From positions 248,001-312,000 of the IMG/VR virus record IMGVR_UViG_3300042391_000634: a stretch of DNA of 64,000 nucleotides; one strand, given 5' to 3'. A program made the position numbers and the translations under genes. Of the stretch, positions 1,965 to 22,839 are shown in pieces (position 1 is the stretch's first letter; each line of letters begins with the position of its first letter). The notes below the pieces were generated by a model. The model searched no databases, was not told the origin of the DNA, and saw only the letters and a program-made list of their open reading frames with translations.

Positions 1965-1984
1965 AAATATTTTTCTTATATTAT
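1953..1984 (+). promoter_or_regulatory. Putative Bacteroidota-type promoter (TTTG-N20-TATATTAT)
   Basis: TTTG 1953-1956, TATATTAT 1977-1984, ATG at 1989; same layout recurs at four other operon starts. Confidence 0.5.
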
Positions 1985-1988
1985 CTTA

Positions 1989-3570: not shown

Positions 3571-3821
3571 CAAAGGAAGAAAAAGATAAAATTGAACTTG
3601 AACTTGAAACACGTAAAATCAAGGCATTAGAAAAAATTGCAAATTCATTAGATGCACTAACTGTGTGGTTTGAGGAAATAGATAAAGATGAATGGGGAAA
3701 TAGGGTCCAATATTATTTAGCTGAATTTCATAATAAAATAGTGAAAGAAATTCCATTTAAAGAAGAAGAGGAAGAAGAAATTAAAACTGACGATAAGAAA
3801 GTAAAGAAAAATGCGAAATAA
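3567..3821 (+). CDS. Hypothetical charged protein
   Basis: 84 aa ORF overlapping both neighbours. Confidence 0.5.
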   Translation: MTKEEKDKIELELETRKIKALEKIANSLDALTVWFEEIDKDEWGNRVQYYLAEFHNKIVKEIPFKEEEEEEIKTDDKKVKKNAK

Positions 3822-6656: not shown

Positions 6657-6657
6657 A

Positions 6658-9462: not shown

Positions 9463-10183
9463 AGAACCGTATTGGTTAAAGTTTCAATGGGACTTATCTA
9501 CACATCATGAAAATCAATATGTAACTGAATTCAATAAATCTGAAAATCTATCATTAACTGATTTTTTTTACAACGAAAATTTTATTATTACATGTAATTT
9601 TAAAATAGAAGATAACTATGAGGGTGAGGATGTTCGTATGATATTTGGTAAATCAGGTAAAAATATGGGATTAAGGTATAATAAACCACAAAGGGAGTTG
9701 TGTTTTGAATTTTGGACGACTACTGAATCTGAAGATTGTTATAATAATGTTTTATTTCCATCGGTAACTAAAGAAGATATTGAAAAAGGAATAACTGTTA
9801 GTGTTATTAGAGATGAAAACAGAATAACCGTTTATAAAAATTTTGTTGAGGATAATCATATTGATTTTGACAATGAGTTTGTTAATGATTATAAAAGACC
9901 TGGTTTATTTATCGGTTGTTGCAGTCCAAGTCCACATCCAAACACATTCGGAGGTTTTACTAAAATAGAAATGAATCATTTTTCATTAATAAGTAAAACT
10001 TCAAACATTAAAGATTCTAAAAGTATATATGAAAAGGAAACCGATGTGATTTTAAAAAATAGATTTTATGATGATATCGTCTGTTTATATGACTTTAAAA
10101 CAGTTAATAATTTAGGTATAGTATACGATGAATCTAAAAATAGTAATTTCTTAGAAAAGGTACCAAAAGAATTTATTATATAA
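9446..10183 (+). CDS. Stand-alone copy of the LamG-like repeat domain
   Basis: 'IFGKSGKNMGL.Y','FEFWT','LFIGCCSP','EMNHFS','CLYDFK' match the repeats of the 6658 ORF. Confidence 0.65.
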   Translation: MTINYREPYWLKFQWDLSTHHENQYVTEFNKSENLSLTDFFYNENFIITCNFKIEDNYEGEDVRMIFGKSGKNMGLRYNKPQRELCFEFWTTTESEDCYNNVLFPSVTKEDIEKGITVSVIRDENRITVYKNFVEDNHIDFDNEFVNDYKRPGLFIGCCSPSPHPNTFGGFTKIEMNHFSLISKTSNIKDSKSIYEKETDVILKNRFYDDIVCLYDFKTVNNLGIVYDESKNSNFLEKVPKEFII

Positions 10184-10228
10184 TTTCATATGTCAATAAT
10201 AAAGTTTATATTATAAAAAAACACCAAT

Positions 10229-11683
10229 ATGTCAGAACACTTAAGTGATTGGAGAGATGAACATTTAAATAAAGTAAGTTGTAGTTTTTGTGCGGCTAAA
10301 TGGTTAAACGTAAGTTTACATTTAGGTCATGGATTTACAAATTCATGTCACCTACCATTACCACATCCAATAGATGTTGAAGCAATTAAAACCAACCCTG
10401 CGGCATTACATAATACCGATTTCAAAAAAGAAATTCGTAAAATGATGTTAGAGGGTATTAAACCGGCAGAATGTTCTTACTGTTGGAAGATTGAGGATAT
10501 CGGTAGAAATAATATTTCTGATAGGGTATATAAGAGTCAAATATATAGTCCTGAAGATATTGCGGCGTTAAAGGAATTACCTTGGGATGCAGATATTATA
10601 CCTCAAACTATGGAGGTTAGTTTTGATAGAACATGTAATTTTGCATGTTCATATTGTAATTCAGGATACTCAACAACATGGGGTAAAGATATTAGAGATA
10701 ACGGACCATATCAAAATTTTAAAACCACAAGTGCAGGTGCCTATTACGCAGATGGTTCTTGGTCGGAGATTTATGGTAAATACAATGAAAACAATCCGTA
10801 TGTGGATGCTTTCTTAAAATGGTGGCCTGAATTGTCACAAAAATTAATGGAAATACGTATAACTGGTGGGGAACCATCACAGTCACGTAATTTTTGGCAG
10901 TTTATGGATGTAATGAAACAATACCCATCCCCTAATTTACGACTTGCAGTCAATTCTAACCTAGGTCTTAACGAAACGACTATGAATAGGTTAATTAGTA
11001 TATCTCACGAATTAGATATCAAAGAATTCGATTTATATACAAGTTGTGAAGCTTATGGTGAGCAAGCGGAATATATTAGAGATGGATTAAATTATGAACT
11101 ATGGAGAAGTAATTTAGTTAAAGTAATTGAGAGCGCTAAAATTAGACAAGTTGTTATCATGATGACAATTAATAGTTTGTGTTTATTTAGTATTACCGAA
11201 TTTTTAGATGATATGTTGAAATTAAAAGAAAAATACGGAACACATAAACCAGTTGTAGATTTTAACATATTAAGATGGCCAGCATTTATGTCACCGCTTA
11301 CATTACCGGATGATGTAAAACATGATTTACATGGTAAGTTATCAATGTGGTGGAGAAAACATAAAAAGAATCCATTAATTAATATGAATGAAGGTGCACA
11401 AATCCAAAGATTAATTGATTATATCGAAGTTGTTAATAGAGGTCATAACACAAGTGAAATGGATATGTCGATGCAATATCACGATTTTAAAAGTTTCTAT
11501 GTTCAATATGATATTCGTAGAAATAAGAATTTTGTAAAAACATTCCCTGAATTGGAAGATTGGTATAATTCATTAGTAATTGATAATACAATTCCATATG
11601 TGGCAATGACTGATGGTAGAATAACTCATTTTGAGCCAGGTGTATATGTTTCAGATAAAGAAAATTATAACAAACCAATTTAA
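10229..11683 (+). CDS. Radical SAM protein (N-terminal twitch type)
   Basis: 'CSFCAAKW..NSCH','CSYCW', CNFACSYC, 'ITGGEP'; paralog of the 6658 C-terminal half. Confidence 0.85.
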   Translation: MSEHLSDWRDEHLNKVSCSFCAAKWLNVSLHLGHGFTNSCHLPLPHPIDVEAIKTNPAALHNTDFKKEIRKMMLEGIKPAECSYCWKIEDIGRNNISDRVYKSQIYSPEDIAALKELPWDADIIPQTMEVSFDRTCNFACSYCNSGYSTTWGKDIRDNGPYQNFKTTSAGAYYADGSWSEIYGKYNENNPYVDAFLKWWPELSQKLMEIRITGGEPSQSRNFWQFMDVMKQYPSPNLRLAVNSNLGLNETTMNRLISISHELDIKEFDLYTSCEAYGEQAEYIRDGLNYELWRSNLVKVIESAKIRQVVIMMTINSLCLFSITEFLDDMLKLKEKYGTHKPVVDFNILRWPAFMSPLTLPDDVKHDLHGKLSMWWRKHKKNPLINMNEGAQIQRLIDYIEVVNRGHNTSEMDMSMQYHDFKSFYVQYDIRRNKNFVKTFPELEDWYNSLVIDNTIPYVAMTDGRITHFEPGVYVSDKENYNKPI

Positions 11684-11685
11684 TA

Positions 11686-12984
11686 ATGGATTTTTTATTT
11701 GAGGACACAGAAAAGTTAGCGAATTTCACATCATGTAATGATATTAATCCATCTGGCATTGGTAGGTTTGGTATTTCGGCATTATTAACTGCAACACAGA
11801 TATATGTTCAAGCGCATGACAAACATAGTGAATTACAATATTATCCTGCGAGCGATGAAAAAAACGGATACATTATACCAGTTTCGGTAAATCATAGTCC
11901 CGATGATTGGACAGGTCATAACCCAAGAGTTAAAAGTTTCTTTTTTCATCTTAATGAAAAATACTTAAAAGATTTAAGAGATAAAAAAGCATTCTTAATG
12001 TTAGATCAAAGTTTAGAAGGTTATCAAACGTCATGGTTGTGGGATTATTTCCATAAACAATGTCAAGAATGGGATGTATCACCAAAACGTATTATATATG
12101 TGACAGGAAATATGATTGCAGATGTGGTTTATGATAAATGGTGTGAAGATAATAATATAATTGAAAAATTAAAGGTTATACCATATCCACATTTTGAATT
12201 AGATATGGGTATGACTTGTTATGGCCGATCTAAAGGTGAGAAAGCACATCCGTTACCGACATTTCAAGATCATATTAATTATAAACTTACACATCCTGAA
12301 AAATTAAAATCGTTTGCGTGTTTAAATAAAAGAATTAGACCACAGAGAGTTTGGTTTTACAATTATCTTTATCATTCTGGTTTATTAAAAGACGGATTAG
12401 TTAGTATGAATGATTTTCCAAAACATTGGTATCAATGGGAAGGGAAACACATGGAAGAAGAATTATTGAATGAAATTACTAAAGGACTACCTTTATTAGT
12501 TTATGAAAAACCTAATAATGAATTAGATGATAGTTTCTACATTAATCGTTTTAATGATGATATTTGTTTGGATACATTTGTTACAGTCATTAGTGAAGCA
12601 CATTGTGGTGATAGTGACCAAACAATGTTCTTAAGTGAAAAAACATTTAAAGTATTAGCTTGTAGACATCCATATATGATAATGGGTAATAAAGATAGTC
12701 TTAATATGATGAGAAAAATTGGTTATAAGACTTTTGATGGTTTTATAGATGAAGGGTATGATACATTACCAACACATGAGAGACTTCAATATCTAATCGA
12801 ATCAATTAGAAAGGTGGTTAACATAAAAGACAAAATTGAATGGTTTAAATCAATGGAAGACACAATTGAATATAACTATAGTGCGTTGATTGAGAAATTA
12901 TTTAGATTTCCAGATGCATATTTGGAAATGAAAAGATATTGTAAAGAAGAAACAAATAAACTAAAACATAAATCATTAATATAA
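11686..12984 (+). CDS. Putative GT-B glycosyltransferase, GT10-like paralog 1
   Basis: 'CLNKRIRPQR','VISE..FLSEKTFK...HPYMIMG','FIDEGYD'. Confidence 0.5.
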   Translation: MDFLFEDTEKLANFTSCNDINPSGIGRFGISALLTATQIYVQAHDKHSELQYYPASDEKNGYIIPVSVNHSPDDWTGHNPRVKSFFFHLNEKYLKDLRDKKAFLMLDQSLEGYQTSWLWDYFHKQCQEWDVSPKRIIYVTGNMIADVVYDKWCEDNNIIEKLKVIPYPHFELDMGMTCYGRSKGEKAHPLPTFQDHINYKLTHPEKLKSFACLNKRIRPQRVWFYNYLYHSGLLKDGLVSMNDFPKHWYQWEGKHMEEELLNEITKGLPLLVYEKPNNELDDSFYINRFNDDICLDTFVTVISEAHCGDSDQTMFLSEKTFKVLACRHPYMIMGNKDSLNMMRKIGYKTFDGFIDEGYDTLPTHERLQYLIESIRKVVNIKDKIEWFKSMEDTIEYNYSALIEKLFRFPDAYLEMKRYCKEETNKLKHKSLI

Positions 12985-13415
12985 TGAAACAAAGAAGATT
13001 TTTACCGACATTATCGGAATTACTTGATAGATTATCAATAGTACAATTAAAAGAGGTTTTTATAACCGACCATAAAGAAGAGTATGCTCAAGAAATTGCA
13101 GACATTACACATGATATACAACTTATTTTAAGTGAAAAAGATGTTGTAATTACTGGTGAAATGTTGAGAGCGGTTATTGTGTGTGCACAAATGAACTTAC
13201 ACATTTGGCATAATGAATCTAATGTAAGAAGTGGAAAAGAAGGACCAAGTATGTTAGCCCTAACACACGGTTTAAATGGTATTAGAAATACCGCTAAAAA
13301 TAAAATACAAGAAGTTGTTGGTGGCAGAAAAGATTACAAAATTGATTGTATCGCCGCAGATTTTAAAGATTGGGAAATTAGTTGGCCGAAGAAAGATGAA
13401 GAAATGGAAGGATAA
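12984..13415 (+). CDS. Hypothetical helical protein (DUF6165-like)
   Basis: 'TLSELLDRLSIVQLK','N..IW..E..VR','N..R...K..I' resemble DUF6165 (from memory). Confidence 0.45.
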   Translation: MKQRRFLPTLSELLDRLSIVQLKEVFITDHKEEYAQEIADITHDIQLILSEKDVVITGEMLRAVIVCAQMNLHIWHNESNVRSGKEGPSMLALTHGLNGIRNTAKNKIQEVVGGRKDYKIDCIAADFKDWEISWPKKDEEMEG

Positions 13416-13417
13416 AT

Positions 13418-13444
13418 AAAAAGGGACATTAAGTCCCTTTTTTT
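13418..13444. terminator. Bidirectional intrinsic terminator
   Basis: AAAAAGGGAC-attaa-GTCCCTTTTT between convergent genes. Confidence 0.85.
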
Positions 13445-13991
13445 ATGATTCGTAATATAACTCAGGATATTCAACTATAACATGAATACCACCTTCAGTA
13501 TAAGCGTTTTTATAAATTGATTCAATCTCTGAATAATTTTTTAAATCCCAAAATTTAGTATTGGGACATATAGATTTAAATTCTTCAAAATAATTACCTC
13601 TATGTTGGTGACCCGGATCTAATGGTTTATCAGAACCTTTACCTAAACGAACAATCATATTAGGTTTCCATTTACCTTGACTCATTAACCCAATTTTATC
13701 AACATGATTTACCAATTGATTTGTTGCACATATTACAAAATCCCAACGAGGGTAGAATGTAATAACAAATTTACCGGCCATTGCCATTCCTAATGACATA
13801 CCCATTTGAGATTCTTCCATAACGGGAAGTTCAATTAATTTATCTTTAGGAACTTCACCTATTGTGGTACTCATAGGATTACCGTGCCAAAGGACTTGTT
13901 GACCTATAAAAACGGTATCTTCCTGTTGACCAAGGTAAGTCATTGAATTAGTTAGTGCGTCCTTGTACGGGGTGTATTGTGGTGAACTCAT
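13443..13991 (-). CDS. TPP enzyme beta subunit (pyrimidine-binding domain only; PDH E1-beta/transketolase-like)
   Basis: 'VFIGQ','ELPVMEESQMGMSLGMAMAG','NQLVN','GHQH','VIVEY'; ATG 13991 overlaps upstream TGA. Confidence 0.8.
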   Translation of the reverse strand: MSSPQYTPYKDALTNSMTYLGQQEDTVFIGQQVLWHGNPMSTTIGEVPKDKLIELPVMEESQMGMSLGMAMAGKFVITFYPRWDFVICATNQLVNHVDKIGLMSQGKWKPNMIVRLGKGSDKPLDPGHQHRGNYFEEFKSICPNTKFWDLKNYSEIESIYKNAYTEGGIHVIVEYPELYYES

Positions 13992-14821
13992 ATTAAATCT
14001 TTTTCTATTCTTTTTATTATGTTTTGTGCAAATATTTGATGACATTCTTTTGACGGGTGGTGATCCAACGGAGGTGTATTTGTGAAGTTATTAAAGTCAC
14101 TTTTAATTTCCATATTACCATGTCTCCTCTGTAAATTTTCTATTGTCTCAAACGGTTCCCCATTATATTCAATGTTAATAAATTTACTATAAAGATATTC
14201 ATCTTTTTTAATTCTACTAAGTAATTCGTCCGTCCAAGCAAATATAATTGGTTTTATACCTTTTTCTTCATAAAACATTAATTTTTCCTTCAATCTTTCA
14301 ACTTGTAAATCTTTATGTAATTCAAACCATTCATCAACAGACATATTATTTTGTTCCATCCATATAAATAAATTTTCAATGTTGTATCCAAAATTTATCT
14401 TGTTATCACCACCAACCCAAGCACCACAGAATTGTTTTTTACCATTCAAAGTAAACCAAAATTTATTTCTCGAAACTTGACTTAATTGAATTATAATATA
14501 ATCAATATCTTCATATGAATATTTTTCATATGATAAATGTTCTTGACCTTTTGTGTTACGGTCAAAAATAGTGTTAAAAAAATCAAACGTTTCATCTTCA
14601 GAACCACCATTAAGATTTTTTACAACTTCAAATGTATTAAAATGATTCGCAATCAATCTTGGATGACGAATTGTATCTTTAAATTTTAAATGTGCGTCAG
14701 TTAAATGATGTCTTTCATATGTTGTTTCATTTGGGGGATAAACTAAACCAGGTAAATCCGAATAGAAATATAACCCCTGACCCCATGTAAATGAACAACC
14801 CCCAAATAGTAATCCTTTCAT
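13988..14821 (-). CDS. SGNH-like hydrolase/acyltransferase family protein
   Basis: 'GGCSFTWGQG','GGS','DHHPSKECH'. Confidence 0.6.
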   Translation of the reverse strand: MKGLLFGGCSFTWGQGLYFYSDLPGLVYPPNETTYERHHLTDAHLKFKDTIRHPRLIANHFNTFEVVKNLNGGSEDETFDFFNTIFDRNTKGQEHLSYEKYSYEDIDYIIIQLSQVSRNKFWFTLNGKKQFCGAWVGGDNKINFGYNIENLFIWMEQNNMSVDEWFELHKDLQVERLKEKLMFYEEKGIKPIIFAWTDELLSRIKKDEYLYSKFINIEYNGEPFETIENLQRRHGNMEIKSDFNNFTNTPPLDHHPSKECHQIFAQNIIKRIEKDLI

Positions 14822-14822
14822 T

Positions 14823-17435
14823 TTATTTATTAAATTCTTCTTTATGTTCATTATACCAATCGTAACCTTTCTTCAAACCTACTGACAAAGATGTTTTTGA
14901 TTCCCAACCTAATTTCTCTTTAATTTTATTAGAATCAATTTTACGTGTAGGTATCATAGAAGGTTTTCCACTAATAAATTCTATTGGAGCATCATGTTCT
15001 GCAATTGTTTTCATTATATCTAATACTTCCAGTACTGAATAAACTTTATTAGAACCAACATTATATACTTCAAACATTTCAGTTTCATTTTCCATAATAA
15101 CTTGTAATGCCTCCACAAAATCTTCAATGTATAATAAATCCCTCAATTCACTACCATCACCCCATACAGGAATTGGGTTCATTCTGTCGGCAACTTTACG
15201 AATTGTTGCTGGTGTCACATGACACTTATTGAAATCATACTTATCATGAGGACCAAACAAATTTGCTGGTCTAACGACAGTACATTTCATTTTAACAGGT
15301 AAATACTTACCATATAATTCACATTGAATCTCAGCATATCTTTTCATCCAACCCACAGGGAAGTAAACAGGATATGGTTCGTCAAATAAGAAATCAGTCT
15401 CAACAACGGGTTCATCTCCTTTAGGTGGATAAACTGTGTTAGATGATAAGAAGATGTAATGTTGAACCTTATTTCTCCAACTGGAGTCAATTAAGAAGTT
15501 ATTCATTGCAACATTCGGTGTAACATGAGCTAATGGATCAACTACCGTGTCCACTGCGTTAGATGTTGAAGCAGCAGCATGAAATACCACATCCACTTCT
15601 TTTGTTGCCATTAAACAACCTTCATAAGTTTGTAAATCATGATATGTGTAATCAACACCATCTTGAATTGTTCTAACACCTCTTTTGTGTAAATTAACTC
15701 TTAAATTGGTGTATCCTTCTCTAAGTAATCTTTCGGTTAAATTTTGTCCTACTAATCCCGAACCACCAGTGATTAATATTTTGGAATTTTTATTCATCAT
15801 ATTTTGTTCTTTTTTTTGCCATGTTTTAAATTCACTTTCATTATAGATAAAATCAATGTAAGTAAATCGTCTAAAATTATTTTTAACTACCTCAACTGCA
15901 TGATTAATATTGTTTTCACTAAAATCTAATATACTAAAATTATATTTTACCGGTAACACTTCTTCTTTAGTATCACCATCATCAATAATTAATTTACCAC
16001 CACCATCAATATAGTCTTTTTCATCTGAAAGGTAAATCAAAACCACACAATATCTTGCGACATTATAACCATCCTGATGAGGAGTAATGAAATCACCATT
16101 CTCGTATAATGTAAAATTATCTTGATGTAGTATATTATCTTTTAAATCGGGATAAATGTTTGGTATGTATGAATCAATTAAGGTTCTAAAATACATTTTA
16201 GCATCCATCATATCTTTAGATATGTTATGAGTTTCCCACCACTTTTGAATCACAAATGCGTCGTTATTTTTAATAAATTCATCTCTGGCCGGAACTTCAT
16301 CTAAGGTAATACTACGTTTATAGTTATCATCACCACTAGCAACACCATATTCGTATCTATACAAATAATTACTTTTATCATTAGATGAAGAAATTACTAA
16401 ATCAACATTACGATTAAAATCATTAACATCTTTAAATAATTTACCACTATTACCAACATAGTAACCTTTTGATAAAAAATCTCTTACATTGAAATCTAAA
16501 TTTGGATTTGGGAATTGTGAAATGTAATAATAGTATGTTTTTTTAAGAGCATCTACAAATGGTTTAGAAGGTAATAAATCATATGATTTTTGTTTAGTCA
16601 CATCCATTTGTCTTCTAAGATCACCATTAGGTTTAGTTGAATCCCACGTGATGGTAATATCTTTACCACTAATTTTAACTAAATCATCAATCATCGATTT
16701 AATAGTAATTTCTTCTCCTGAACCAAAATTTACAATATCATTAATTTTATTTTCATACATTTTATATATTGCATCTGCAACGTCATCACCAAATACAAAG
16801 TCTCTAGTTGGACTACCATCCCCCCAACATTCCATTGTCCCTTCAGATTCCCATATTTTCTTAATTGTAGTTGATATTACGGTACCATTACCACTAAAGT
16901 CATCATATTCACCAAATATATTTGCAGGTCTTATAATTGACCATTTATCATACCCATATTGAACTTTATATGCTTCTAATAACAATTCACCTGTCCTTTT
17001 AGACCAAGATGGAAACCAATCATGTTCAGATGGTAATGTTTTCCATACATCATCCTCCACAAATTTTTCAGCGGGAGCATACACACCAACAGAACTCATA
17101 AAAACTAACCATATATCTCTTTTATAACATTGGTGAATCAATTCCGTATTAATTTTAAAAGACGGATATAAGAAATCAACAGGTTTAGTTTTAGCTCTAA
17201 TAGGAGAACCCTTTATTCCAAATGCATTAATAACAACATCAGGAGAATACTTATCCAATATATTACTAATATTATTTTCTTTAGTAAGGTCCATTTTTTC
17301 AAATGAAAATCTTTTGGTTGAAATGTTGGGTTCATTTATGTCAACGCCAATCACATGGTATCGTTCCCTTAAAAATTTTTTTATTAGATAGGTCCCAACC
17401 AAACCAGAACAACCCGTTATTAATACTTTTTTCAT
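14823..17435 (-). CDS. Fusion: NDP-sugar epimerase/reductase (Fcl-like) + 2OG-Fe(II) oxygenase + second Fcl-like epimerase/reductase
   Basis: Two 'ILITG.SGLVG' Rossmann motifs with 'RPAN.FG..D.F' and 'WGDGS..RD'; middle 'YENGDFITPHQD..H.V..V...R'. Confidence 0.8.
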   Translation of the reverse strand: MKKVLITGCSGLVGTYLIKKFLRERYHVIGVDINEPNISTKRFSFEKMDLTKENNISNILDKYSPDVVINAFGIKGSPIRAKTKPVDFLYPSFKINTELIHQCYKRDIWLVFMSSVGVYAPAEKFVEDDVWKTLPSEHDWFPSWSKRTGELLLEAYKVQYGYDKWSIIRPANIFGEYDDFSGNGTVISTTIKKIWESEGTMECWGDGSPTRDFVFGDDVADAIYKMYENKINDIVNFGSGEEITIKSMIDDLVKISGKDITITWDSTKPNGDLRRQMDVTKQKSYDLLPSKPFVDALKKTYYYYISQFPNPNLDFNVRDFLSKGYYVGNSGKLFKDVNDFNRNVDLVISSSNDKSNYLYRYEYGVASGDDNYKRSITLDEVPARDEFIKNNDAFVIQKWWETHNISKDMMDAKMYFRTLIDSYIPNIYPDLKDNILHQDNFTLYENGDFITPHQDGYNVARYCVVLIYLSDEKDYIDGGGKLIIDDGDTKEEVLPVKYNFSILDFSENNINHAVEVVKNNFRRFTYIDFIYNESEFKTWQKKEQNMMNKNSKILITGGSGLVGQNLTERLLREGYTNLRVNLHKRGVRTIQDGVDYTYHDLQTYEGCLMATKEVDVVFHAAASTSNAVDTVVDPLAHVTPNVAMNNFLIDSSWRNKVQHYIFLSSNTVYPPKGDEPVVETDFLFDEPYPVYFPVGWMKRYAEIQCELYGKYLPVKMKCTVVRPANLFGPHDKYDFNKCHVTPATIRKVADRMNPIPVWGDGSELRDLLYIEDFVEALQVIMENETEMFEVYNVGSNKVYSVLEVLDIMKTIAEHDAPIEFISGKPSMIPTRKIDSNKIKEKLGWESKTSLSVGLKKGYDWYNEHKEEFNK

Positions 17436-17441
17436 AATATA

Positions 17442-18680
17442 TTATTTGTTTATGTTATTAAAATATTCTAAGTCTTTATTTAATTTAGAAATATTAATAA
17501 CAATTTGTTTATTTTTCTCAAATCTTGATTCGTTATTTTTATAAAATTCAATAAGTTTGTCTTTATTTTTACTAAGTCTTTTTATTTCATCATATACCAT
17601 AAATAATCTCTTTTTATTATCAGGCTCATTATCATAAGAATGATCAAGTATGTCATCAAACATATCAAAACCATACATTTCTTTAATGTATTTAATGTGG
17701 TTCATTGACGATAAGAAAATAGGAAATTGATAGAAATAAAATGGTTTTAGTGTCTTTTCGGTAATGTGAATTTCATTAAACAAAAAATTTGATTCTGTAA
17801 CAATATTAACATATGAACTTTCATATGTTTTTAATTCATATATTTGGTTCCATTCAAAGGAAGGTGAAATCTCTTCAGAAGTAAACCATTCTCTGTCTAC
17901 CTCAAATTTACTTCGTTTAACGTCAATATTATCTAAGTAAGCAATTTGTTCTTGGTAAACGAAATGCATCTCATATTTTGTTAATAAATTTTCATAGAAT
18001 CCACCATATCTATTCGTTTTACGATACCAACCCATAACCATAGACCAATCAATGTCCTCAATTAAACCACTTTTTAGTAATAAACAAATAAAAACATAAC
18101 GATGCACCTTTGGACTACGATTATGACACATAAAAAATTCAGAGTTTTTCTCCGGTATAAATTTAGAGTCATATTTACATAAATGTTTAGATATAAATTT
18201 TAATAAAAATCCTGTTGAATAAACATTAATTTCGGTATTTAAAGATTGCTTATGTTGACTTAACCTAGAGTTATTATTTAATATATAAAATCTTTTTCTA
18301 TCGTAACCCTTATCTAAACAATCGTCATCAATAAATTTTAAATACTCTTCAGTTTCAGGCTCATGTTCATTTAAAATCACTATGTTGAAATTTTCACATT
18401 TCATAAAACACTCAACAACGTTTTCAGGTAAAGGTATTTTTTTAAATTGGTGAAACAAGTATAAGGAATTACCAACTGGATTAATAAAATAAAAATATTT
18501 CTCATTTGGGTTATTATATACGTCCTCAATCTTACAATTTCTTACTTGATTAATAACTTCATAGAAATTAAATAACCCTTTTACTGTTCTAAATGAATTA
18601 CTATTAGTGGTACTACATAAATTGGGTAACATGTCCTCACCATCCCAAGAATCGTATACCGTGTTTAAAATTTTATCCAT
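17442..18680 (-). CDS. Putative GT-B glycosyltransferase, GT10-like paralog 2
   Basis: 'MCHNRSPKVHR','NIVTES..HITEKTLKPF','DHSYD'. Confidence 0.5.
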   Translation of the reverse strand: MDKILNTVYDSWDGEDMLPNLCSTTNSNSFRTVKGLFNFYEVINQVRNCKIEDVYNNPNEKYFYFINPVGNSLYLFHQFKKIPLPENVVECFMKCENFNIVILNEHEPETEEYLKFIDDDCLDKGYDRKRFYILNNNSRLSQHKQSLNTEINVYSTGFLLKFISKHLCKYDSKFIPEKNSEFFMCHNRSPKVHRYVFICLLLKSGLIEDIDWSMVMGWYRKTNRYGGFYENLLTKYEMHFVYQEQIAYLDNIDVKRSKFEVDREWFTSEEISPSFEWNQIYELKTYESSYVNIVTESNFLFNEIHITEKTLKPFYFYQFPIFLSSMNHIKYIKEMYGFDMFDDILDHSYDNEPDNKKRLFMVYDEIKRLSKNKDKLIEFYKNNESRFEKNKQIVINISKLNKDLEYFNNINK

Positions 18681-19860
18681 TATTATTTCTTAATTTTTTA
18701 AAGTATTCAATATCATAAGTATCATTAGATATTTCTGATATTATTTTTTTATTTTGTATTAATCTATCAACATTTGTATCATAAAATTTTTTTACATCCA
18801 AACCATTTAATTTTTCAATTTCATGCACAATAAGACTAAACCTTTTTTTATCGTCAATTTCATTATCATATGAGTGGTCAATAAAATCATCAAACATATC
18901 AAATTTATATATTTCCTTTAATTTTTTAACATGTCCATATGTTGTTAAAAAAATAGGTAATTGATAAAAATTAAATGGTTTAAAAGATTTTTCAGTAATA
19001 TGAATACGGTTACCCTCAAAATAGGTTTCAGTTACGATATTAATATAGGCACTTTCAAATGTTTTAGTGTAAATAAAATCATTTTCTAAATTATCATTTA
19101 ATTGATTATATTCATATTTACTTTTTTTGATACCTAATTTATTAAAATATTCTACGTGTGGCAGTAAAGAATTAATTTCATCGTCACTATATAATTTTCT
19201 AAAAAACTGATAGTAATCTCTATTTGGGTCATCATTTAAAAGAAATGACCAATCAGTATTATTAAGAATATTTAATTTTTTCATTTCCAAAAGAATTCCA
19301 AATCTATGAGGTTTAATTCTTTTATTGTGGCACATAAATAAAAATTCTTTATCTGTTACAATATTAATATTATTTTTAAAAATGTGTTTTGAATAATAGG
19401 AAGGTAGAAATCTTAAAGAATAAACATTAACACCATTATTTTTTAATTTATAATAGTCTAAATTAGAATTATTATTAATAAAATAAAATTGATTAGGATT
19501 TAATTCTTGTTTTATTACCGATTCACTAAGTAAAATATAATTTTCTTCTGATTCAGATTCATGTTCATTTAAAAAAACAACATTTAAATTTTTATTGTTT
19601 TTCATTAATTCAATAAATTCAGGTTTTAGAAATGTCGGTAGTCCTAAAAATCTTAAATCAGATAATTGATAAATAAAATAATAGTAATTCTCATTACTAT
19701 TTTCAATAGAATTACATTCAATGATATTATTAATACCAATAGATTCCAAAACATTTTTTATTTTACTAAATTTACGTTCTTTAGGTTCTCTAATTTGATA
19801 ATAATATCTCTCATCAATATCTTCGTAATCACCCACTAATATATTTAAAAAATCACCCAT
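18673..19860 (-). CDS. Putative GT-B glycosyltransferase, GT10-like paralog 3
   Basis: 'MCHNKRIKPHR','NIVTET..HITEKSFKPF','DHSYD'; likely ATG at 19860. Confidence 0.5.
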   Translation of the reverse strand: MGDFLNILVGDYEDIDERYYYQIREPKERKFSKIKNVLESIGINNIIECNSIENSNENYYYFIYQLSDLRFLGLPTFLKPEFIELMKNNKNLNVVFLNEHESESEENYILLSESVIKQELNPNQFYFINNNSNLDYYKLKNNGVNVYSLRFLPSYYSKHIFKNNINIVTDKEFLFMCHNKRIKPHRFGILLEMKKLNILNNTDWSFLLNDDPNRDYYQFFRKLYSDDEINSLLPHVEYFNKLGIKKSKYEYNQLNDNLENDFIYTKTFESAYINIVTETYFEGNRIHITEKSFKPFNFYQLPIFLTTYGHVKKLKEIYKFDMFDDFIDHSYDNEIDDKKRFSLIVHEIEKLNGLDVKKFYDTNVDRLIQNKKIISEISNDTYDIEYFKKLRNNNG

Positions 19861-20477
19861 TTCCCTGTTCCGTAGTGCGGCCACTCTTTTTTATATTCAT
19901 ACCAAATAACATCATTAGGTATTTCTCTTTTAATACCATTCCAAGTTTCCTCAGTTGGTGTATTTGTAGATACCCCATTATCCTCAATAATAAAACGAAT
20001 AGGTAAGTCGTAACGTTGTGCATATTTATGCATTTCATAAAAACCACCAGTTTCAAATGCCATATCACCAATAAAACACCAAACTTTATCATCTTTATTA
20101 TCTCTTTTATTGGCCATAGCAACACCGGTTGCAATTGGAATAATAGCCCCAACAATTGCCGAAGCATAAAATTTATACTCTTCACTAACAATTGTAATAG
20201 ATCTTCCCTCTATAATTTCTTGTTCTAACCATTCTGATGGTATTCCCTTAATTAATGCGTGATAATGTGATCTCCACGTACTAAAGACCCAATCGGTTGG
20301 TTTTATTCTTTTACCAATTTCAAGTAATTGTTCTTCATTACCACCACTTAAATGTACTGGTCCTTTTATTCTTCCAGCTTCCCAATGGTCGGCAATTGTT
20401 TTCTCAAAACCAATTAAACCATGTTTATCCCAAAGAACTTCATTTACTATGGGATATTGTTCTAAATTTTTTATCAT
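19845..20477 (-). CDS. TPP enzyme alpha subunit (PDH E1-alpha-like, short)
   Basis: 'GPVHLSGGNE','STWRSHYHAL','AIVG', TPP motif 'GDMA..G..(x)..EDN'. Confidence 0.85.
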   Translation of the reverse strand: MIKNLEQYPIVNEVLWDKHGLIGFEKTIADHWEAGRIKGPVHLSGGNEEQLLEIGKRIKPTDWVFSTWRSHYHALIKGIPSEWLEQEIIEGRSITIVSEEYKFYASAIVGAIIPIATGVAMANKRDNKDDKVWCFIGDMAFETGGFYEMHKYAQRYDLPIRFIIEDNGVSTNTPTEETWNGIKREIPNDVIWYEYKKEWPHYGTGKWVIF

Positions 20478-21019
20478 CTGTCTCTTTTTTGTAATATTGG
20501 ATTATTTGTTGGCCATTCCATTTGATATTCGGGATCATTCCATTTAACAACTCCTTGTTCGTCAGCATCAACATAACCATCTTTGTAAAATAAGTTATAA
20601 TGAAACATACAATCGGTTAGTGCGTAATGTCCATTCGCAAAACCTGGTGGAACTAGTACTTGATTTCTATCTTTTTCAGTTATCATAAAAGATTCCCACT
20701 CACCGAAGGTGTCTGATTTTGGTCTCATATCTAATACTATTAAATATATATCACCAACCGCAGCTTGAACTAATTTCCAAGTCTTATTATCATAATGTAA
20801 TCCTCTCAACACACCTTTGTATGATTTTGAAAATCTACCGTGGATACTAATTTCAGATTTCTCATAATGAATGTGTCTCATTACAGGATGTTCTTCACTA
20901 TGAAATGTTGTAAATATTTCACCCCTATACTCTCTATAAATTGAAGGTGTGAACGTAGGTACTTGGTGACCAAATTTTTTTGATGGAGTCTCTATAAACT
21001 CATCCCATTTGTTACTCAT
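20474..21019 (-). CDS. rmlC: RmlC-like NDP-4-keto-sugar 3,5-epimerase
   Basis: 'GVLRGLHY','KLV','D.R..S.TFG.W','VPPGFANGH','WNDP..WP'. Confidence 0.85.
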   Translation of the reverse strand: MSNKWDEFIETPSKKFGHQVPTFTPSIYREYRGEIFTTFHSEEHPVMRHIHYEKSEISIHGRFSKSYKGVLRGLHYDNKTWKLVQAAVGDIYLIVLDMRPKSDTFGEWESFMITEKDRNQVLVPPGFANGHYALTDCMFHYNLFYKDGYVDADEQGVVKWNDPEYQMEWPTNNPILQKRDR

Positions 21020-21831
21020 ATTATTTTTTTATTTTGTTTTTTTTGTAAAAATTTAGCAAGTTCTTTTGCATATTCTAAATGGCCAAAATAACCTGGATGA
21101 AAATCTTTATAGTTTTCACCAACTTCATCTTTAATTAATAAGTTATTATTTTTACACCAACCAGCAATATCATCACCTTTATTATGTTTTGTAAATGAAA
21201 TAATGTCATTATCATCAAAACAATCTTTAAAATAAAAATCATTTGAAGACATGACAAATACTTTAATATTATTCATTTTACAAAAAGAATAAAGACCAAT
21301 AAATTGTTGTTCATTTTTTTTAATATTCTCTTCTAAATTAAAAAAATCAAAAAACAATTGTTTAAATTTATCTTGATATTTTTTATCTATTTCATATACT
21401 CCACTATCAAAATACGATCTGGTCGCATATCCAAATTCAAGTTTACGTTCCTCACCAATAAAATTAGAATTTGAAATGAAATAATCACCAATTTCGTTAA
21501 AATAAAATTCAGATCTTGTAGAATCTGGTTTTTCCAAAATTAAAAAAAATTCATCTCTTTCAAGCCAATGACTATCGATAAAATCATATGTCTTTCTTAC
21601 CAATCTTTCCATTCCACCACCACACTTAGCTTCATTAATACAAGGAATATTGATTATATCCGATAATCGTTTACCAAAATTAACCTCAGATCTATTTAAC
21701 CAACTAACACCAAATTGTTTTTGATATTCAGGAATAACACTATCACTCCTAATATCTGGTTCTTCTAAACCACCACCCTCACAATATGAGGACCCATTAA
21801 CGTAAAAATATTTATATTTTGATAAGTCCAT
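21016..21831 (-). CDS. SGNH-like protein
   Basis: 'NGSSYCEGGG','DFHPGYFGH'. Confidence 0.6.
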   Translation of the reverse strand: MDLSKYKYFYVNGSSYCEGGGLEEPDIRSDSVIPEYQKQFGVSWLNRSEVNFGKRLSDIINIPCINEAKCGGGMERLVRKTYDFIDSHWLERDEFFLILEKPDSTRSEFYFNEIGDYFISNSNFIGEERKLEFGYATRSYFDSGVYEIDKKYQDKFKQLFFDFFNLEENIKKNEQQFIGLYSFCKMNNIKVFVMSSNDFYFKDCFDDNDIISFTKHNKGDDIAGWCKNNNLLIKDEVGENYKDFHPGYFGHLEYAKELAKFLQKKQNKKII

Positions 21832-21832
21832 A

Positions 21833-22804
21833 TTATGTTTGATTTGCATATCCTAAAGGAAAACCGTTTCTAAATTCTGCACCCATTTTAGGAACAACCA
21901 TTTGATAAGCCATTATTAATTCTTCAATACCACGATCTAAATCCCATTCTGGTTTCCATCCAGTTGATTCAACTTTAGAATTTGATACGATATAATTTCT
22001 CTTATCGGGGTCCTCGTAAAAATCGTTATACGATACTGCAAAGTTTTTAACGTGAGATTGAATTTTTTCTAATAATTCTTGTTTACTTAAATTAGCGTCA
22101 CTTAAACCAACATTAAAAACATCACCCTTGTATTTGTCGTAGTTATTTAACATAAATAAGAATACGTTAGCCACATCTTGAATATGTATAAAATTACGTT
22201 TAAATGATTTCTCAAATACTACAATATATTTGTCAGTAATTGCTTTATATGTAAAATCATTAACTAATAAATCGGTTCTCATACGAGGGGATACACCGAA
22301 TACTGTTGCCAATCTAAAAATAATGGCATCGGTTGAAGTCCTTAAAAAATTCTCAGCCTCACATTTTGTTTGACCATAAACTGAAATTGGTGTAAGTGGA
22401 GATTCTTCGGTACATTCTAATTGACCAGTACTTAAACCGTAACCACTATTAGTATTTGGATATAATATTTTCTTACCTTTACCATTACAATATTTTACAA
22501 TATTAACGATTTGTTTAAAATTAATTTCTTTAGCTAATTCGGGTTCCGATGCACATGCTGGAAACCCCACTATTGCCGCCAATGGAATTATAACATCACA
22601 CTCATTACAAAGTCTTTCCAATAAAATTTCGTTACGAACATCACCATGTATAAATTTAAATTTAGGATTTGAGGTGTATGATAGAAGAGAAACCTGATTA
22701 AAGATTAACTTGTCAAGAACAACAACTTCGTGTCCTTCAGACAACATTTTTCCCGTAATTACTGATCCAAGGTATCCGGCCCCTCCGGTTATTAATATTT
22801 TCAT
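21833..22804 (-). CDS. NAD-dependent sugar epimerase/dehydratase (extended SDR)
   Basis: 'ILITGGAGYLGS','LAAIVG.PAC','YGQTK','RLATVFGVSPRMR.DL'. Confidence 0.9.
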   Translation of the reverse strand: MKILITGGAGYLGSVITGKMLSEGHEVVVLDKLIFNQVSLLSYTSNPKFKFIHGDVRNEILLERLCNECDVIIPLAAIVGFPACASEPELAKEINFKQIVNIVKYCNGKGKKILYPNTNSGYGLSTGQLECTEESPLTPISVYGQTKCEAENFLRTSTDAIIFRLATVFGVSPRMRTDLLVNDFTYKAITDKYIVVFEKSFKRNFIHIQDVANVFLFMLNNYDKYKGDVFNVGLSDANLSKQELLEKIQSHVKNFAVSYNDFYEDPDKRNYIVSNSKVESTGWKPEWDLDRGIEELIMAYQMVVPKMGAEFRNGFPLGYANQT

Positions 22805-22808
22805 ATAT

Positions 22809-22839
22809 AAAATATACAAAAAAAATAATGAATTACAAA
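22809..22839 (-). promoter_or_regulatory. Putative promoter TTTG-N19-TATATTTT in divergent intergenic region
   Basis: Reverse complement of CAAA (22836-39) and AAAATATA (22809-16); a TATATTTC at 22863 faces the + operon. Confidence 0.5.

What the first reader, a model, noticed from the sequence alone, without database searches (positions are those of the whole stretch)
13443..20477. Minimal split TPP enzyme among sugar-nucleotide genes: likely branched-chain sugar synthesis
Seen: a short E1-alpha-like gene (210 aa) and a beta-like gene lacking the C-terminal domain (182 aa), about 6 kb apart in one operon with RmlC and SDRs. There is no E2 or E3 in the window. Known: AviB1/AviB2 (avilamycin eurekanate) and YerE (yersiniose) use TPP to add a pyruvate-derived two-carbon branch to NDP-4-keto-sugars. 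Inference: the phage makes a C-branched sugar rather than encoding a pyruvate dehydrogenase AMG.
Basis: partly seen in the sequence, partly recalled or inferred. Interest (0 to 1): 0.6.

Follow-up and report, generated by a model that had tools for sequence, protein, structure and literature searches.

The report
Minimal split thiamine enzyme for sugars
A freshwater jumbo phage carries a stripped-down, two-piece thiamine-dependent enzyme inside a GDP-sugar (heptose-type) modification operon; it is not a pyruvate dehydrogenase, and it most likely adds a carbon branch to a 4-keto sugar, though no experiment has tested this.

Summary
Gene 19845-20477(-) encodes a 210-aa E1-alpha-like ThDP (PP) domain. 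Gene 13443-13991(-) encodes a 182-aa E1-beta-like PYR domain. Both lie in one minus-strand operon (13443-22819) of a 335-kb lake phage. The two proteins form one enzyme:
- they are fused in cyanophages S-SM2 and P-TIM68;
- they are adjacent in the cellular loci that held DNA downstream of alpha;
- they lie on the same strand in 72 of 80 related viral contigs;
- a complex model passes (0.88 versus 0.00 for controls).

It is not a PDH. Both subunits lack the E1 C-terminal parts, and the genome has no E2, lipoyl domain or E3.

The neighbours are close homologues of the Campylobacter GDP-heptose C4-dehydrogenase (PDB 6VO6, E 5e-103), the 4-keto-heptose epimerases, and GDP-fucose-synthase-like reductases, plus GT10-like transferases. 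Five related contigs carry only dehydrogenase, epimerase, alpha and beta, with no reductase. The ThDP enzyme therefore sits where the keto group must be consumed.

Best reading (about 0.55): carboligation of a 2-oxoacid-derived unit onto a GDP-4-keto sugar. The mini alphas form a distinct clade spanning bacteria, archaea and phages (PHROG 34187, "unknown function"), not a demonstrated AviB orthologue. Chemistry is inferred, not shown.

The parts
21833..22819 (-). SDR, 328 aa. Homologue of the Cj1427-type GDP-heptose C4-dehydrogenase, which makes the 4-keto sugar without 6-deoxygenation.
   Evidence: PDB 6VO6/6VO8 at E 5e-103, 348 bits, full length. It shares the NTNSGYG motif in place of the dehydratase acid/base pair. 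That 6VO6 is Cj1427 comes from memory; the chemistry is described in PMC10680097. It is 93% identical in relative L013. Orthologues at 47-49% identity lie next to mini alpha/beta in bacteria.
21016..21849 (-). Accessory ORF, 277 aa, function unknown.
   Evidence: No Pfam, NCBIfam, PHROG or PDB hit. Present in only 3 of 80 related viral loci.
20474..21019 (-). RmlC-like cupin, 181 aa. Probable GDP-4-keto-heptose 3- or 3,5-epimerase (Cj1430-like).
   Evidence: Pfam dTDP_sugar_isom, E 9e-32. The best PDB hits are C. jejuni GDP-D-glycero-4-keto-D-lyxo-heptose epimerases 8DCL, 7M14, 8DCO and 8DB5 (E about 2e-33), against about 1e-21 for dTDP RmlC. Present in 68 of 80 related viral loci.
19845..20477 (-). 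Mini E1-alpha-like subunit, 210 aa: the ThDP diphosphate-binding (PP) domain only.
   Evidence: E1_dh positions 9-172 of 300. It aligns to residues 60-209 of human PDH E1-alpha. G137, D138, E165 and P200-H201 are invariant and N167 nearly so in 26 family members. It matches the N-terminal half of PHROG 34187 and of S-SM2 gp198.
18673..19884 (-). GT-B glycosyltransferase paralogue, 403 aa (GT10-like, probably uses a GDP-sugar donor).
   Evidence: 39% identical to the 412-aa neighbour and a member of alignment A2. Fold evidence is given under the next part.
17442..18680 (-). GT-B glycosyltransferase, 412 aa (GT10-like).
   Evidence: AlphaFold model built from the 33-sequence alignment A2: pLDDT 90.4. 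The top Foldseek PDB hit is H. pylori alpha-1,3-fucosyltransferase 2NZW (E 4.6e-4, prob 0.99); further hits are other GT-B enzymes. The family consensus contains a TEK-type motif. No sequence-level family hit.
14823..17435 (-). Three-domain protein, 870 aa: a GDP-fucose-synthase-like SDR (about 1-310), a 2OG-Fe(II) oxygenase domain (about 441-529), and a GDP-fucose-synthase / GDP-mannose-epimerase-like SDR (about 545-868).
   Evidence: Pfam and NCBIfam hits. PDB hits: 8DU0 for residues 2-306; 2C59, 1BSV and 7M13 for residues 541-868. Relatives split it into 549 aa plus 324 aa. The SDR parts are each present in 61 of 80 related loci and the 2OG part in 21 of 80.
13988..14851 (-). ORF of 287 aa (likely 277 aa from the second Met), function unknown. 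Translationally coupled to beta.
   Evidence: Its stop overlaps the beta start (ATGA). A paralogous family is present in 38 of 80 related loci. The only lead is a feature similarity to viral clusters, some of whose members carry DUF6071 or SGNH/GDSL. No PDB hit.
13443..13991 (-). Mini E1-beta-like subunit, 182 aa: the ThDP pyrimidine-binding (PYR) domain only, without the C-terminal E2-binding domain.
   Evidence: Transket_pyr. It aligns to residues 7-176 of human E1-beta. The catalytic Glu E59 and His H130 are invariant in 23 members. It matches the C-terminal half of PHROG 34187 and of S-SM2 gp198. The complex model with alpha scores ipSAE 0.88 against 0.00 for the best control.
13418..13442 (.). 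Bidirectional intrinsic-terminator hairpin that closes the operon.
   Evidence: A 10-bp stem with T runs on both strands.

Best explanation
The two genes encode the PP and PYR halves of one minimal ThDP enzyme, presumably an alpha2beta2 assembly like E1. It works at the nucleotide-sugar level.

Proposed steps (all inferred):
1. The phage takes a host GDP-manno-configured sugar, either GDP-D-glycero-D-manno-heptose or GDP-mannose.
2. The Cj1427-like SDR oxidises C4.
3. The cupin epimerises C3/C5.
4. The ThDP enzyme decarboxylates a 2-oxoacid, with pyruvate the default guess. It adds the resulting acyl-anion equivalent to the C4 ketone, giving a tertiary alcohol with an acyl (acetyl) branch.
5. 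In this phage the fused SDR / 2OG-oxygenase / SDR protein then tailors the product, for example by reducing the branch carbonyl or by hydroxylation.
6. GT10-like transferases install the sugar in a glycan.

Shown: the domain content, intact cofactor and catalytic residues, alpha-beta partnership, lack of PDH partners, and the conserved gene neighbourhood. Inferred: the acceptor, the donor and the product.
For: - One enzyme: alpha and beta are fused in S-SM2 gp198 (402 aa) and in P-TIM68. PHROG 34187 covers both halves. Beta follows alpha within about 40 nt in the 10 of 12 cellular loci where downstream DNA was held and a beta match was scored. Beta lies on the same strand in 72 of 80 viral loci, at gaps of 18 nt to 9.2 kb. 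The complex model scores 0.88 against 0.00 for the best control; 51 of 78 solved complexes and 2 of 108 mismatched pairs reach the mark. The runs share at least 97% of contacts and partner pLDDT is 90.
- Active enzyme: the G-D...E-x-N metal/ThDP motif, Glu59(beta) and His130(beta) are conserved across phages, bacteria and archaea.
- Keto-sugar context: the neighbours match 6VO6 (E 5e-103), the C. jejuni 4-keto-heptose epimerases, and GDP-fucose-synthase-like reductases.
- Minimal cassette: five contigs carry only dehydrogenase, epimerase, alpha and beta, with no other SDR within 10 kb at E<1e-3. The ThDP enzyme thus occupies the place of the C4 reductase.
- Nucleotide level: the phage genome has no NTP_transferase, GmhA or GHMP kinase.
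- Branching context elsewhere: NDP-keto-sugar C-methyltransferases flank alpha/beta in a 735-kb phage and in 5 viral loci.
- Partner reductases and donor supply: a reductase sits next to the gene in other contexts, namely Zn-ADH in cyanophages, an AKR in L030, and an SDR in L042. A malic enzyme, a pyruvate source, lies in cluster L030.
- Precedent: YerE-type and E1-type (alphaKADH2) enzymes add acyl groups to keto sugars. KbDH-alpha/beta does so in vitro with pyruvate and ketone acceptors (PMC12247030, PMC9306805, PMC4802897, PMC10338323).
Against: No biochemical datum exists for any member of this mini clade. Authentic AviB, Plm or KbDH sequences could not be compared. The one full-length E1 pair found in a sugar cluster (L032) falls outside the clade. 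In several cellular and cyanophage loci alpha/beta sits beside GmhA, sugar kinases and nucleotidyltransferases. That would also fit a role upstream, at the sugar-phosphate level. The five minimal-cassette contigs are close relatives and count as about one lineage, and a host reductase could complete the pathway. No RNA data were found. That 6VO6 is Cj1427 rests on memory.
Confidence: 0.55

Rival explanations
1. The mini ThDP enzyme acts upstream, on sugar phosphates. In a transketolase- or DXS-like condensation it builds a ketose phosphate (sedoheptulose-7-P or an unusual higher ketose). GmhA, a kinase, a phosphatase and a nucleotidyltransferase then turn this into an NDP-heptose.
For: GmhA (SIS) lies directly upstream and is translationally coupled in Chloroflexota locus L042. 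GmhA, a carbohydrate kinase and nucleotidyltransferases are present in the S-SM2 and P-TIM68 clusters. GHMP kinase, HAD phosphatase and NTase genes are present in L029 and L030, and an HldE-like gene in L044. The logic matches the octose pathway of lincomycin (from memory).
Against: This phage and 75 of 80 related contigs have alpha/beta among nucleotide-level enzymes with no NTase or kinase within 10 kb; a GmhA-like gene appears in only 5 of 80. The whole genome lacks SIS_2, GHMP and NTP_transferase. The four-gene cassette would be left without a reductase. The best family match is E1_dh, not Transketolase_N or DXS.
Confidence: 0.15
2. The enzyme branches a keto sugar but transfers a different unit: a hydroxyacetyl group (transketolase-like, as proposed for miharamycin and amipurimycin) or a longer functionalised acyl group from a larger 2-oxoacid (as with ErwE and MygE), possibly 2-oxoglutarate.
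For: Donor range varies widely among sugar-branching ThDP enzymes (PMC9306805, PMC12247030). A class II aldolase gene lies in the S-SM2 cluster. The Cj1427-type partner already handles 2-oxoglutarate.
Against: E1-type (alphaKADH2) branching enzymes known so far appear restricted to C2 units from pyruvate. The malic enzyme in L030 points to pyruvate. No aldolase was found in this operon.
Confidence: 0.15
3. The enzyme is a decarboxylase or lyase acting on a sugar-borne 2-oxoacid or alpha-hydroxyketone. It removes or rearranges carbon rather than adding a branch.
For: E1 enzymes natively decarboxylate 2-oxoacids. A nucleotide-sugar dehydrogenase gene lies nearby at 24157-25332 and in 5 of 80 related loci.
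Against: No conserved partner would create a sugar 2-oxoacid. The dehydrogenase is an occasional neighbour only. A 4-keto-uronate decarboxylates without ThDP.
Confidence: 0.08
4. It is a pyruvate, acetoin or branched-chain 2-oxoacid dehydrogenase E1 kept by the phage as a central-metabolism auxiliary gene, using host E2 and E3.
For: The best-scoring named models are PDH E1 alpha and beta. JGI annotates homologues that way.
Against: Scores are far below the NCBIfam cut-offs: 93 against 394 bits and 36 against 321 bits. Alpha lacks the C-terminal half, which in E1 holds the regulatory loops and an active-site His (from memory). Beta lacks the E2-binding Transketolase_C domain. The genome has no E2, lipoyl domain or E3. 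The gene sits in sugar clusters in phages, bacteria and archaea.
Confidence: 0.03

Closest known systems
E1-type (TEED alphaKADH2) sugar C-acetylating enzymes: AviB1/AviB2, Plm8/Plm9, AlmDI/DII, EvdU5/EvdS3, KbDH-alpha/beta
   Same: A two-subunit E1-alpha/beta-like ThDP enzyme encoded in a nucleotide-sugar cluster beside the enzyme that makes the keto sugar. No E2 or E3 partner. The expected chemistry is transfer of a pyruvate-derived C2 unit to a ring ketone, followed by optional reduction of the branch.
   Different: Those enzymes are described as highly similar to full PDH E1 subunits and occur in actinomycete antibiotic clusters acting on deoxy-keto or 4-keto-pentose sugars. Here each subunit is cut down to the bare PP or PYR domain (210 and 182 aa). 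The clade is separate from a full-length E1 pair that coexists in bacterial cluster L030/L032. The setting is a phage GDP-heptose-type pathway. Authentic sequences could not be compared.
Campylobacter jejuni capsular heptose modification cassette (Cj1427 C4-dehydrogenase, Cj1430 C3/C5-epimerase, Cj1428 C4-reductase)
   Same: The operon's SDR, cupin and GDP-fucose-synthase-like domains are their closest solved homologues. The order of steps is the same: oxidise C4, epimerise, then act on the ketone (PMC10680097).
   Different: No ThDP enzyme is described in the C. jejuni pathways in the paper read here (no occurrence of 'thiamine' in PMC10680097). Here alpha/beta is added, or in five relatives stands in place of the reductase. 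The phage lacks the GDP-heptose supply genes.
YerE / ErwE / MygE (ALS-like 'DC' superfamily sugar-branching ThDP enzymes of LPS)
   Same: The proposed reaction type is the same: a 2-oxoacid donor is added to an NDP-4-keto sugar in a surface-glycan pathway, followed by a reductase.
   Different: Those are single-chain, ALS-type enzymes; from memory, three domains of about 560-580 aa, and YerE is reported as a flavoprotein (reference title). They belong to a different ThDP superfamily and act on CDP-3,6-dideoxy-4-keto sugars.
Cyanophage 'transketolase central region-containing protein' (S-SM2 gp198, P-TIM68) = PHROG 34187
   Same: True family members: 44% (alpha part) and 31% (beta part) identity to S-SM2 gp198, and 43% and 32% to the P-TIM68 protein. 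They have the same two domains and sit in sugar-nucleotide clusters.
   Different: They are fused into one chain of about 400 aa. Their neighbours are Zn-ADH, GmhA, a kinase and nucleotidyltransferases. They fall in a different subclade. Their function is annotated as unknown.

Membership tests
2-oxoacid dehydrogenase E1, heterotetrameric alpha2beta2 (PDH / BCKDH / acetoin DH) | Alpha subunit with the ThDP/Mg-binding GDG...NN-type motif | tested here: met
   G137-D138-M...E165-D-N167 aligns to the human E1-alpha motif. G137, D138 and E165 are invariant and N167 nearly invariant in 26 members.
2-oxoacid dehydrogenase E1, heterotetrameric alpha2beta2 (PDH / BCKDH / acetoin DH) | Beta subunit PYR domain with the cofactor-activating Glu and active-site His | tested here: met
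   E59 and H130 align to the E1-beta Glu and the QH motif. Both are invariant in 23 members.
2-oxoacid dehydrogenase E1, heterotetrameric alpha2beta2 (PDH / BCKDH / acetoin DH) | Full-length alpha (about 320-370 aa, whole E1_dh profile) | tested here: not met
   210 aa; only profile positions 9-172 of 300 match. The same truncation is seen in all mini members. NCBIfam gives 93 bits against a cut-off of 394.
2-oxoacid dehydrogenase E1, heterotetrameric alpha2beta2 (PDH / BCKDH / acetoin DH) | Beta C-terminal Transketolase_C domain (E2 binding) | tested here: not met
   182 aa containing Transket_pyr only. There is no Transketolase_C anywhere in the genome.
2-oxoacid dehydrogenase E1, heterotetrameric alpha2beta2 (PDH / BCKDH / acetoin DH) | Works with an E2 lipoyl acyltransferase and E3 | tested here: not met
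   The phage genome has no PF00198, no PF00364 and no PF07992 above the cut-off. Use of host E2 was not excluded by these searches.
E1-type (alphaKADH2) sugar C-acetylating enzymes (AviB1/B2, Plm8/9, KbDH-alpha/beta) | E1-alpha/beta-like pair encoded in a nucleotide-sugar cluster next to a keto-sugar-forming enzyme | tested here: met
   The operon contains a Cj1427-like dehydrogenase and an epimerase. This neighbourhood is conserved in 54-68 of 80 viral loci and in bacteria.
E1-type (alphaKADH2) sugar C-acetylating enzymes (AviB1/B2, Plm8/9, KbDH-alpha/beta) | Groups phylogenetically with authentic members | tested here: inconclusive
   Authentic sequences were not obtainable. A proxy, the full-length E1 pair in sugar cluster L030/L032, falls outside the mini clade on a long branch, with support 93/91.
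E1-type (alphaKADH2) sugar C-acetylating enzymes (AviB1/B2, Plm8/9, KbDH-alpha/beta) | Pyruvate-dependent acetyl transfer to a keto sugar | not testable with these tools
   Needs an enzyme assay.
YerE-like ALS-type sugar-branching enzymes | Single-chain enzyme with TPP_enzyme_N, TPP_enzyme_M and TPP_enzyme_C domains (flavoprotein) | tested here: not met
   Only a weak TPP_enzyme_C match (32 bits), secondary to E1_dh. There is no N or M domain, and the enzyme has two chains.
Split-gene transketolase (as proposed for miharamycin and amipurimycin) | Transketolase_N subunit plus a Transket_pyr + Transketolase_C subunit | tested here: not met
   There is no Transketolase_N match at E<=0.01 in Pfam. 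The transketolase NCBIfam hit is 33 bits against a cut-off of 488. There is no Transketolase_C.
Campylobacter-type GDP-heptose modification cassette | Cj1427-like C4-dehydrogenase, Cj1430-like epimerase and GDP-fucose-synthase-like C4-reductase | tested here: met
   6VO6 at 348 bits; 8DCL/7M14/8DCO at about 119 bits; 1BSV/7M13/8DU0 at 78-102 bits.
Campylobacter-type GDP-heptose modification cassette | GDP-heptose supply genes (GmhA, HddA, GmhB, HddC) in the same genome | tested here: not met
   The phage has no SIS_2, GHMP or NTP_transferase. They are present beside mini alpha/beta in cyanophages and cellular loci. The real substrate, heptose or mannose, therefore stays open.

The most novel reading that the evidence does not exclude
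The mini alpha/beta pair would be a fourth, previously unrecognised architecture of sugar-branching ThDP enzymes: the smallest E1-derived form, with bare PP and PYR domains that occur split, adjacent or fused. It is spread through bacteria, DPANN-type archaea and hundreds of phages. It is coupled to Cj1427-type C4-dehydrogenases, so that it replaces the C4-reductase and turns GDP-heptoses or hexoses into C4-acyl-branched sugars not yet seen in any glycan. Abundant lake and ocean phages would then display or impose such sugars.
Probability: 0.4. Interest if true: 0.75.

Novelty: new variant of a known kind. Interest (0 to 1): 0.62.

Why it matters
ThDP-dependent branching of keto sugars is currently known from three enzyme types: YerE-like, full-length E1-like, and split transketolase. 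All come from bacterial LPS or antibiotic pathways. A minimal E1-derived form tied to the heptose C4-oxidation pathway would have three consequences:
- it would add a new and very compact carboligase scaffold for making tertiary alcohols;
- it would predict unknown branched heptoses or hexoses in environmental glycans;
- it would give a function to PHROG 34187 and to the cyanophage genes annotated "transketolase central region" or "PDH E1 alpha", which are easily misread as central-carbon AMGs in viromes.

The family is abundant. At least 554 IMG/VR contigs carry it, thousands of metagenome proteins match it, and this phage's sequence is found in lake metagenomes from 17 studies. A corrected annotation would therefore affect many ecological AMG surveys.

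Tried and rejected
- Megablast of the operon against the phage collection found nothing.
- A single-sequence AlphaFold model of the 412-aa ORF failed (pLDDT 32). It worked only with a 33-sequence alignment.
- The 277-aa and 287-aa ORFs gave no Pfam, NCBIfam, PHROG or PDB hit. For the 287-aa ORF the Atlas gave only a weak SGNH/DUF6071 lead.
- A profile of the GT family against PDB sequences, and a scan of its members against Pfam, gave nothing. Only the fold search placed it.
- The papers on the Cj1427 structure and function and on AviB1/B2 are not held. A text search for the PDB code returned only noise. The identity of 6VO6 is therefore from memory.
- No paper was found that links a ThDP enzyme to heptose pathways or to these cyanophage genes.
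- No RNA run holds the region, so read laying was not used and expression is untested.
- The promoter scan was uninformative in this AT-rich DNA: 74 sites found against 72 expected.
- The large representative-protein search and the metagenome-contig scan were not run. The family was already placed and the claim does not rest on absence of relatives.
- Rejected: a giant-virus origin, an early thought prompted by the GT7 and collagen genes, because terminase and portal genes are present.
- Rejected: a 4,6-dehydratase role for the 328-aa SDR, because it has the Cj1427-type motif.

Full report
**What is there**

The window is bases 248001-312000 of a 335,630-bp IMG/VR virus record with 31% G+C. 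The record has a large terminase, a portal and a DNA polymerase, so it is a tailed jumbo phage. The same stretch occurs in lake-water metagenomes from 17 studies.

Nine tightly packed or overlapping genes run on the minus strand from 22819 to 13443 and end at a bidirectional terminator hairpin at 13418-13442. In order they are:

| Coordinates | Size | Assignment |
|---|---|---|
| 21833-22819 | 328 aa | SDR |
| 21016-21849 | 277 aa | unknown |
| 20474-21019 | 181 aa | RmlC-like cupin |
| 19845-20477 | 210 aa | E1-alpha-like protein |
| 18673-19884 and 17442-18680 | 403 and 412 aa | two paralogous proteins |
| 14823-17435 | 870 aa | SDR / 2OG-Fe(II)-oxygenase / SDR fusion |
| 13988-14851 | 287 aa | unknown |
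| 13443-13991 | 182 aa | E1-beta-like protein |

The start codon of the last gene overlaps the preceding stop (ATGA).

**The two ThDP pieces**

- Alpha matches only positions 9-172 of the 300-position E1_dh profile. It aligns to residues 60-209 of human PDH E1-alpha, including the G-D...E-D-N cofactor/metal motif.
- Beta matches only the pyrimidine-binding domain. It keeps the cofactor-activating Glu (E59) and the active-site His (H130).
- These residues, plus a C-terminal P-H in alpha, are invariant across 26 alpha and 23 beta sequences from phages, bacteria and archaea.
- The parts that make an E1 a dehydrogenase component are missing: the C-terminal half of alpha and the Transketolase_C domain of beta.
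- The whole genome has no E2 catalytic domain, lipoyl domain, Transketolase_C, or E3 above the cut-off.
- NCBIfam scores against PDH E1 models are far below their cut-offs.

**They are one enzyme**

- In cyanophages S-SM2 and P-TIM68 the two halves are fused in one protein of about 400 aa, annotated "transketolase central region-containing protein". Alpha is 44% identical to residues 6-199 of S-SM2 gp198, and beta is 31% identical to residues 231-398.
- PHROG 34187 (405 positions, "unknown function") matches alpha at positions 5-198 and beta at 237-401.
- Twelve cellular loci were fetched, from Chloroflexota, Desulfobacterota, Omnitrophota, Parcubacteria, Nanoarchaeota and Woesearchaeota. Beta follows alpha within about 40 nt in the ten loci that kept DNA downstream of alpha and scored a beta match. 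One Prochlorococcus single-cell contig carries the fused form.
- A complex model scored ipSAE 0.88, with 0.00 for the best of three controls. That mark is reached by 51 of 78 solved complexes and 2 of 108 mismatched pairs. The runs agree in at least 97% of contacts and partner pLDDT is 90.
- Because E1 alpha/beta complexes are solved, this pass shows likeness rather than independent proof. The interface (alpha 111-126, beta 60-74) is the usual PP:PYR contact.
- Among 80 related viral contigs, beta lies on the same strand within 10 kb in 72. The alpha-to-beta gap ranges from 18 nt to 9.2 kb. The 6-kb split in this phage is thus the result of genes inserted between two originally adjacent genes.

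**The neighbours point to a GDP-heptose-type 4-keto sugar, not a 6-deoxy sugar**

- The 328-aa SDR matches PDB 6VO6/6VO8 over its full length at E 5e-103. It shares the N-T-N-S-G-Y-G stretch where 4,6-dehydratases carry their acid/base pair.
- From memory, 6VO6 is C. jejuni Cj1427. The papers that would confirm this are not held.
[quoted passage not shown] Cj1430 then epimerises C3/C5 and Cj1428 reduces C4 (PMC10680097).
- The cupin's best solved relatives are those GDP-4-keto-heptose epimerases (E about 2e-33), well ahead of dTDP RmlC (about 1e-21).
- Both SDR domains of the 870-aa protein resemble GDP-fucose synthase, GDP-mannose epimerase and the C. jejuni C4-reductases.
- The 403/412-aa paralogues had no sequence-family hit. 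A model built from a 33-sequence alignment (pLDDT 90.4) is a GT-B fold. Its best match is the GDP-fucose-dependent alpha-1,3-fucosyltransferase of H. pylori.
- Two GT9 (heptosyltransferase-family) genes lie elsewhere in the window.
- The phage has no GmhA, GHMP kinase or sugar-1-P nucleotidyltransferase. It must therefore draw on a host GDP-sugar. Whether that sugar is GDP-heptose or GDP-mannose cannot be told.

**Comparative evidence for where the ThDP enzyme acts**

At least 554 IMG/VR contigs encode a relative. In the best 80, the genes found most often within 10 kb are:

| Gene within 10 kb of alpha | Loci (of 80) |
|---|---|
| beta | 72 |
| cupin | 68 |
| first GDP-fucose-synthase-like SDR | 61 |
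| second GDP-fucose-synthase-like SDR | 61 |
| GT-B family | about 60 |
| Cj1427-like SDR | 54 |
| nucleotidyltransferase or GHMP kinase | 0 |
| GmhA-like gene | 5 |
| NDP-sugar C-methyltransferase | 5 |

- Five contigs (L057, L064, L066, L068, L076) carry only dehydrogenase, epimerase, alpha and beta, with no other SDR detectable within 10 kb. In that cassette the ThDP enzyme stands where the C. jejuni pathway has its C4-reductase, so it is the only candidate to consume the ketone. These five are close relatives and count as roughly one lineage.
- In bacteria, orthologues of the Cj1427-like SDR (47-49% identity) sit beside mini alpha/beta in three loci. In a Desulfosudaceae chromosome the local set is GHMP kinase, nucleotidyltransferase, SDR, then alpha and beta.
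- A 735-kb phage has beta, a radical-SAM/SPASM gene and alpha, flanked by two NDP-keto-sugar C-methyltransferases.
- Other contexts place a carbonyl reductase next to the gene: Zn-ADH in cyanophages, an aldo-keto reductase in L030, and an SDR in L042. L030 also holds a malic enzyme, a plausible pyruvate source.

**Mechanism proposed**

ThDP bound between alpha (diphosphate/Mg site) and beta (Glu59-activated pyrimidine) decarboxylates a 2-oxoacid. The resulting enamine attacks the C4 ketone of the epimerised GDP-4-keto sugar. The product is a tertiary alcohol with an acyl branch.

In this phage the SDR domains and the 2OG oxygenase would then tailor the branch or ring, and the GT10-like enzymes would transfer the sugar.

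The chemistry has precedent:
- YerE (CDP-4-keto-3,6-dideoxyglucose plus pyruvate);
- ErwE and MygE, with longer donors;
- E1-type enzymes in antibiotic pathways (AviB1/B2, Plm8/9, EvdU5/S3, AlmDI/DII);
- KbDH-alpha/beta, which couples pyruvate to ketones, including sugar analogues, in vitro (PMC9306805, PMC12247030, PMC4802897, PMC10338323).

None of the steps for the phage enzyme is shown experimentally.

**Rivals**

- A role upstream at the sugar-phosphate level is suggested by GmhA, kinases and nucleotidyltransferases beside the gene in cyanophages and some cells. It fits poorly with this phage, which lacks all of those genes.
- A different donor (hydroxyacetyl or a longer acyl group) is an open variant of the main reading.
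- A decarboxylase/lyase role has little support.
- A true PDH E1 role has almost none.

**Relation to known families**

A tree of 26 mini alphas and two full-length E1 alphas places the mini forms in one clade (support 93/91) on a long branch. It has two subclades:
- one with archaeal, Desulfobacterales, 735-kb-phage and fused cyanophage members, several of which sit next to radical-SAM genes;
- one with the Cj1427-associated bacteria and the jumbo phages.

One of the two outgroups (L032) is a full-length E1 pair lying next to a C-methyltransferase, RmlC and SDRs in the same bacterial gene cluster that also holds a mini pair. The two kinds are therefore distinct.

I file the finding as working like the E1-type sugar-branching enzymes, but not as a demonstrated member of that group. 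It is a new minimal variant.

**Limits**

- No expression data: no RNA run holds the region.
- The 277-aa and 287-aa ORFs remain unassigned.
- The host is unknown.
- The identity of the acceptor, donor and product is inferred from gene context only.

Noticed in passing
window 1-64000: Nearly the whole 64-kb window is a glycan-biosynthesis island. It holds GT7-like (beta-4-GalT-like) proteins with LamG domains, GT1/GT2/GT4/GT9 genes, FkbM and other methyltransferases, a carbamoyltransferase, GDSL/SGNH and DUF6071 proteins, 2OG and Asp/Asn-hydroxylase-like oxygenases, a nucleotide-sugar dehydrogenase, and a further SDR.
   Followed up: partly
window 38337-39467 and 43982-46105: Two proteins match GT9 (the heptosyltransferase family). 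One also matches the N-terminal domain of the protein heptosyltransferase TibC. This hints that the phage uses heptose and perhaps glycosylates proteins with it.
   Followed up: no
window 46170-48197: A collagen-repeat protein with a C-terminal S74 'chaperone of endosialidase' domain lies in a locally G+C-rich stretch (38% against about 30%). It is a likely fibre and a candidate carrier of the glycan.
   Followed up: no
window 6640-9462 and 37267-38319: Two radical-SAM genes. The 940-aa one passes the NCBIfam cut-off for twitch-domain radical-SAM proteins (306 bits against 170). Radical-SAM/SPASM or B12 radical-SAM genes also sit next to mini alpha/beta in a 735-kb phage, a Desulfobacterales locus, a Woesearchaeota locus and a Desulfosudaceae locus.
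   Followed up: partly
L030 (= L019) 623-16473: One bacterial polysaccharide cluster holds both a full-length E1-alpha/E1-beta pair (310 and 312 aa, next to a C-methyltransferase, RmlC and SDRs) and a mini alpha/beta pair (206 and 181 aa). The mini pair sits with an aldo-keto reductase, a GHMP kinase, GT2 genes, a malic enzyme, a HAD phosphatase and a nucleotidyltransferase.
   Followed up: partly
L012 (P-TIM68) about 8990-10197; L026 2630-3829: The P-TIM68 fused gene is annotated as 381 aa, but the open frame gives 402 aa, as in S-SM2. A Prochlorococcus single-cell assembly contig carries a near-identical 399-aa fused form, probably phage DNA from an infected cell.
   Followed up: no
window 14823-17435 vs L013 11885-14510: The 870-aa three-domain protein of this phage is two genes (549 aa and 324 aa) in close relatives. 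The 2OG-oxygenase part is present in only 21 of 80 related loci.
   Followed up: partly
G000:C1:75864-75983 (outside the window): A 372-aa ORF has a sub-threshold match to the first 41 positions of Pyr_redox_2 (a dinucleotide-binding motif only). It is not an E3.
   Followed up: no
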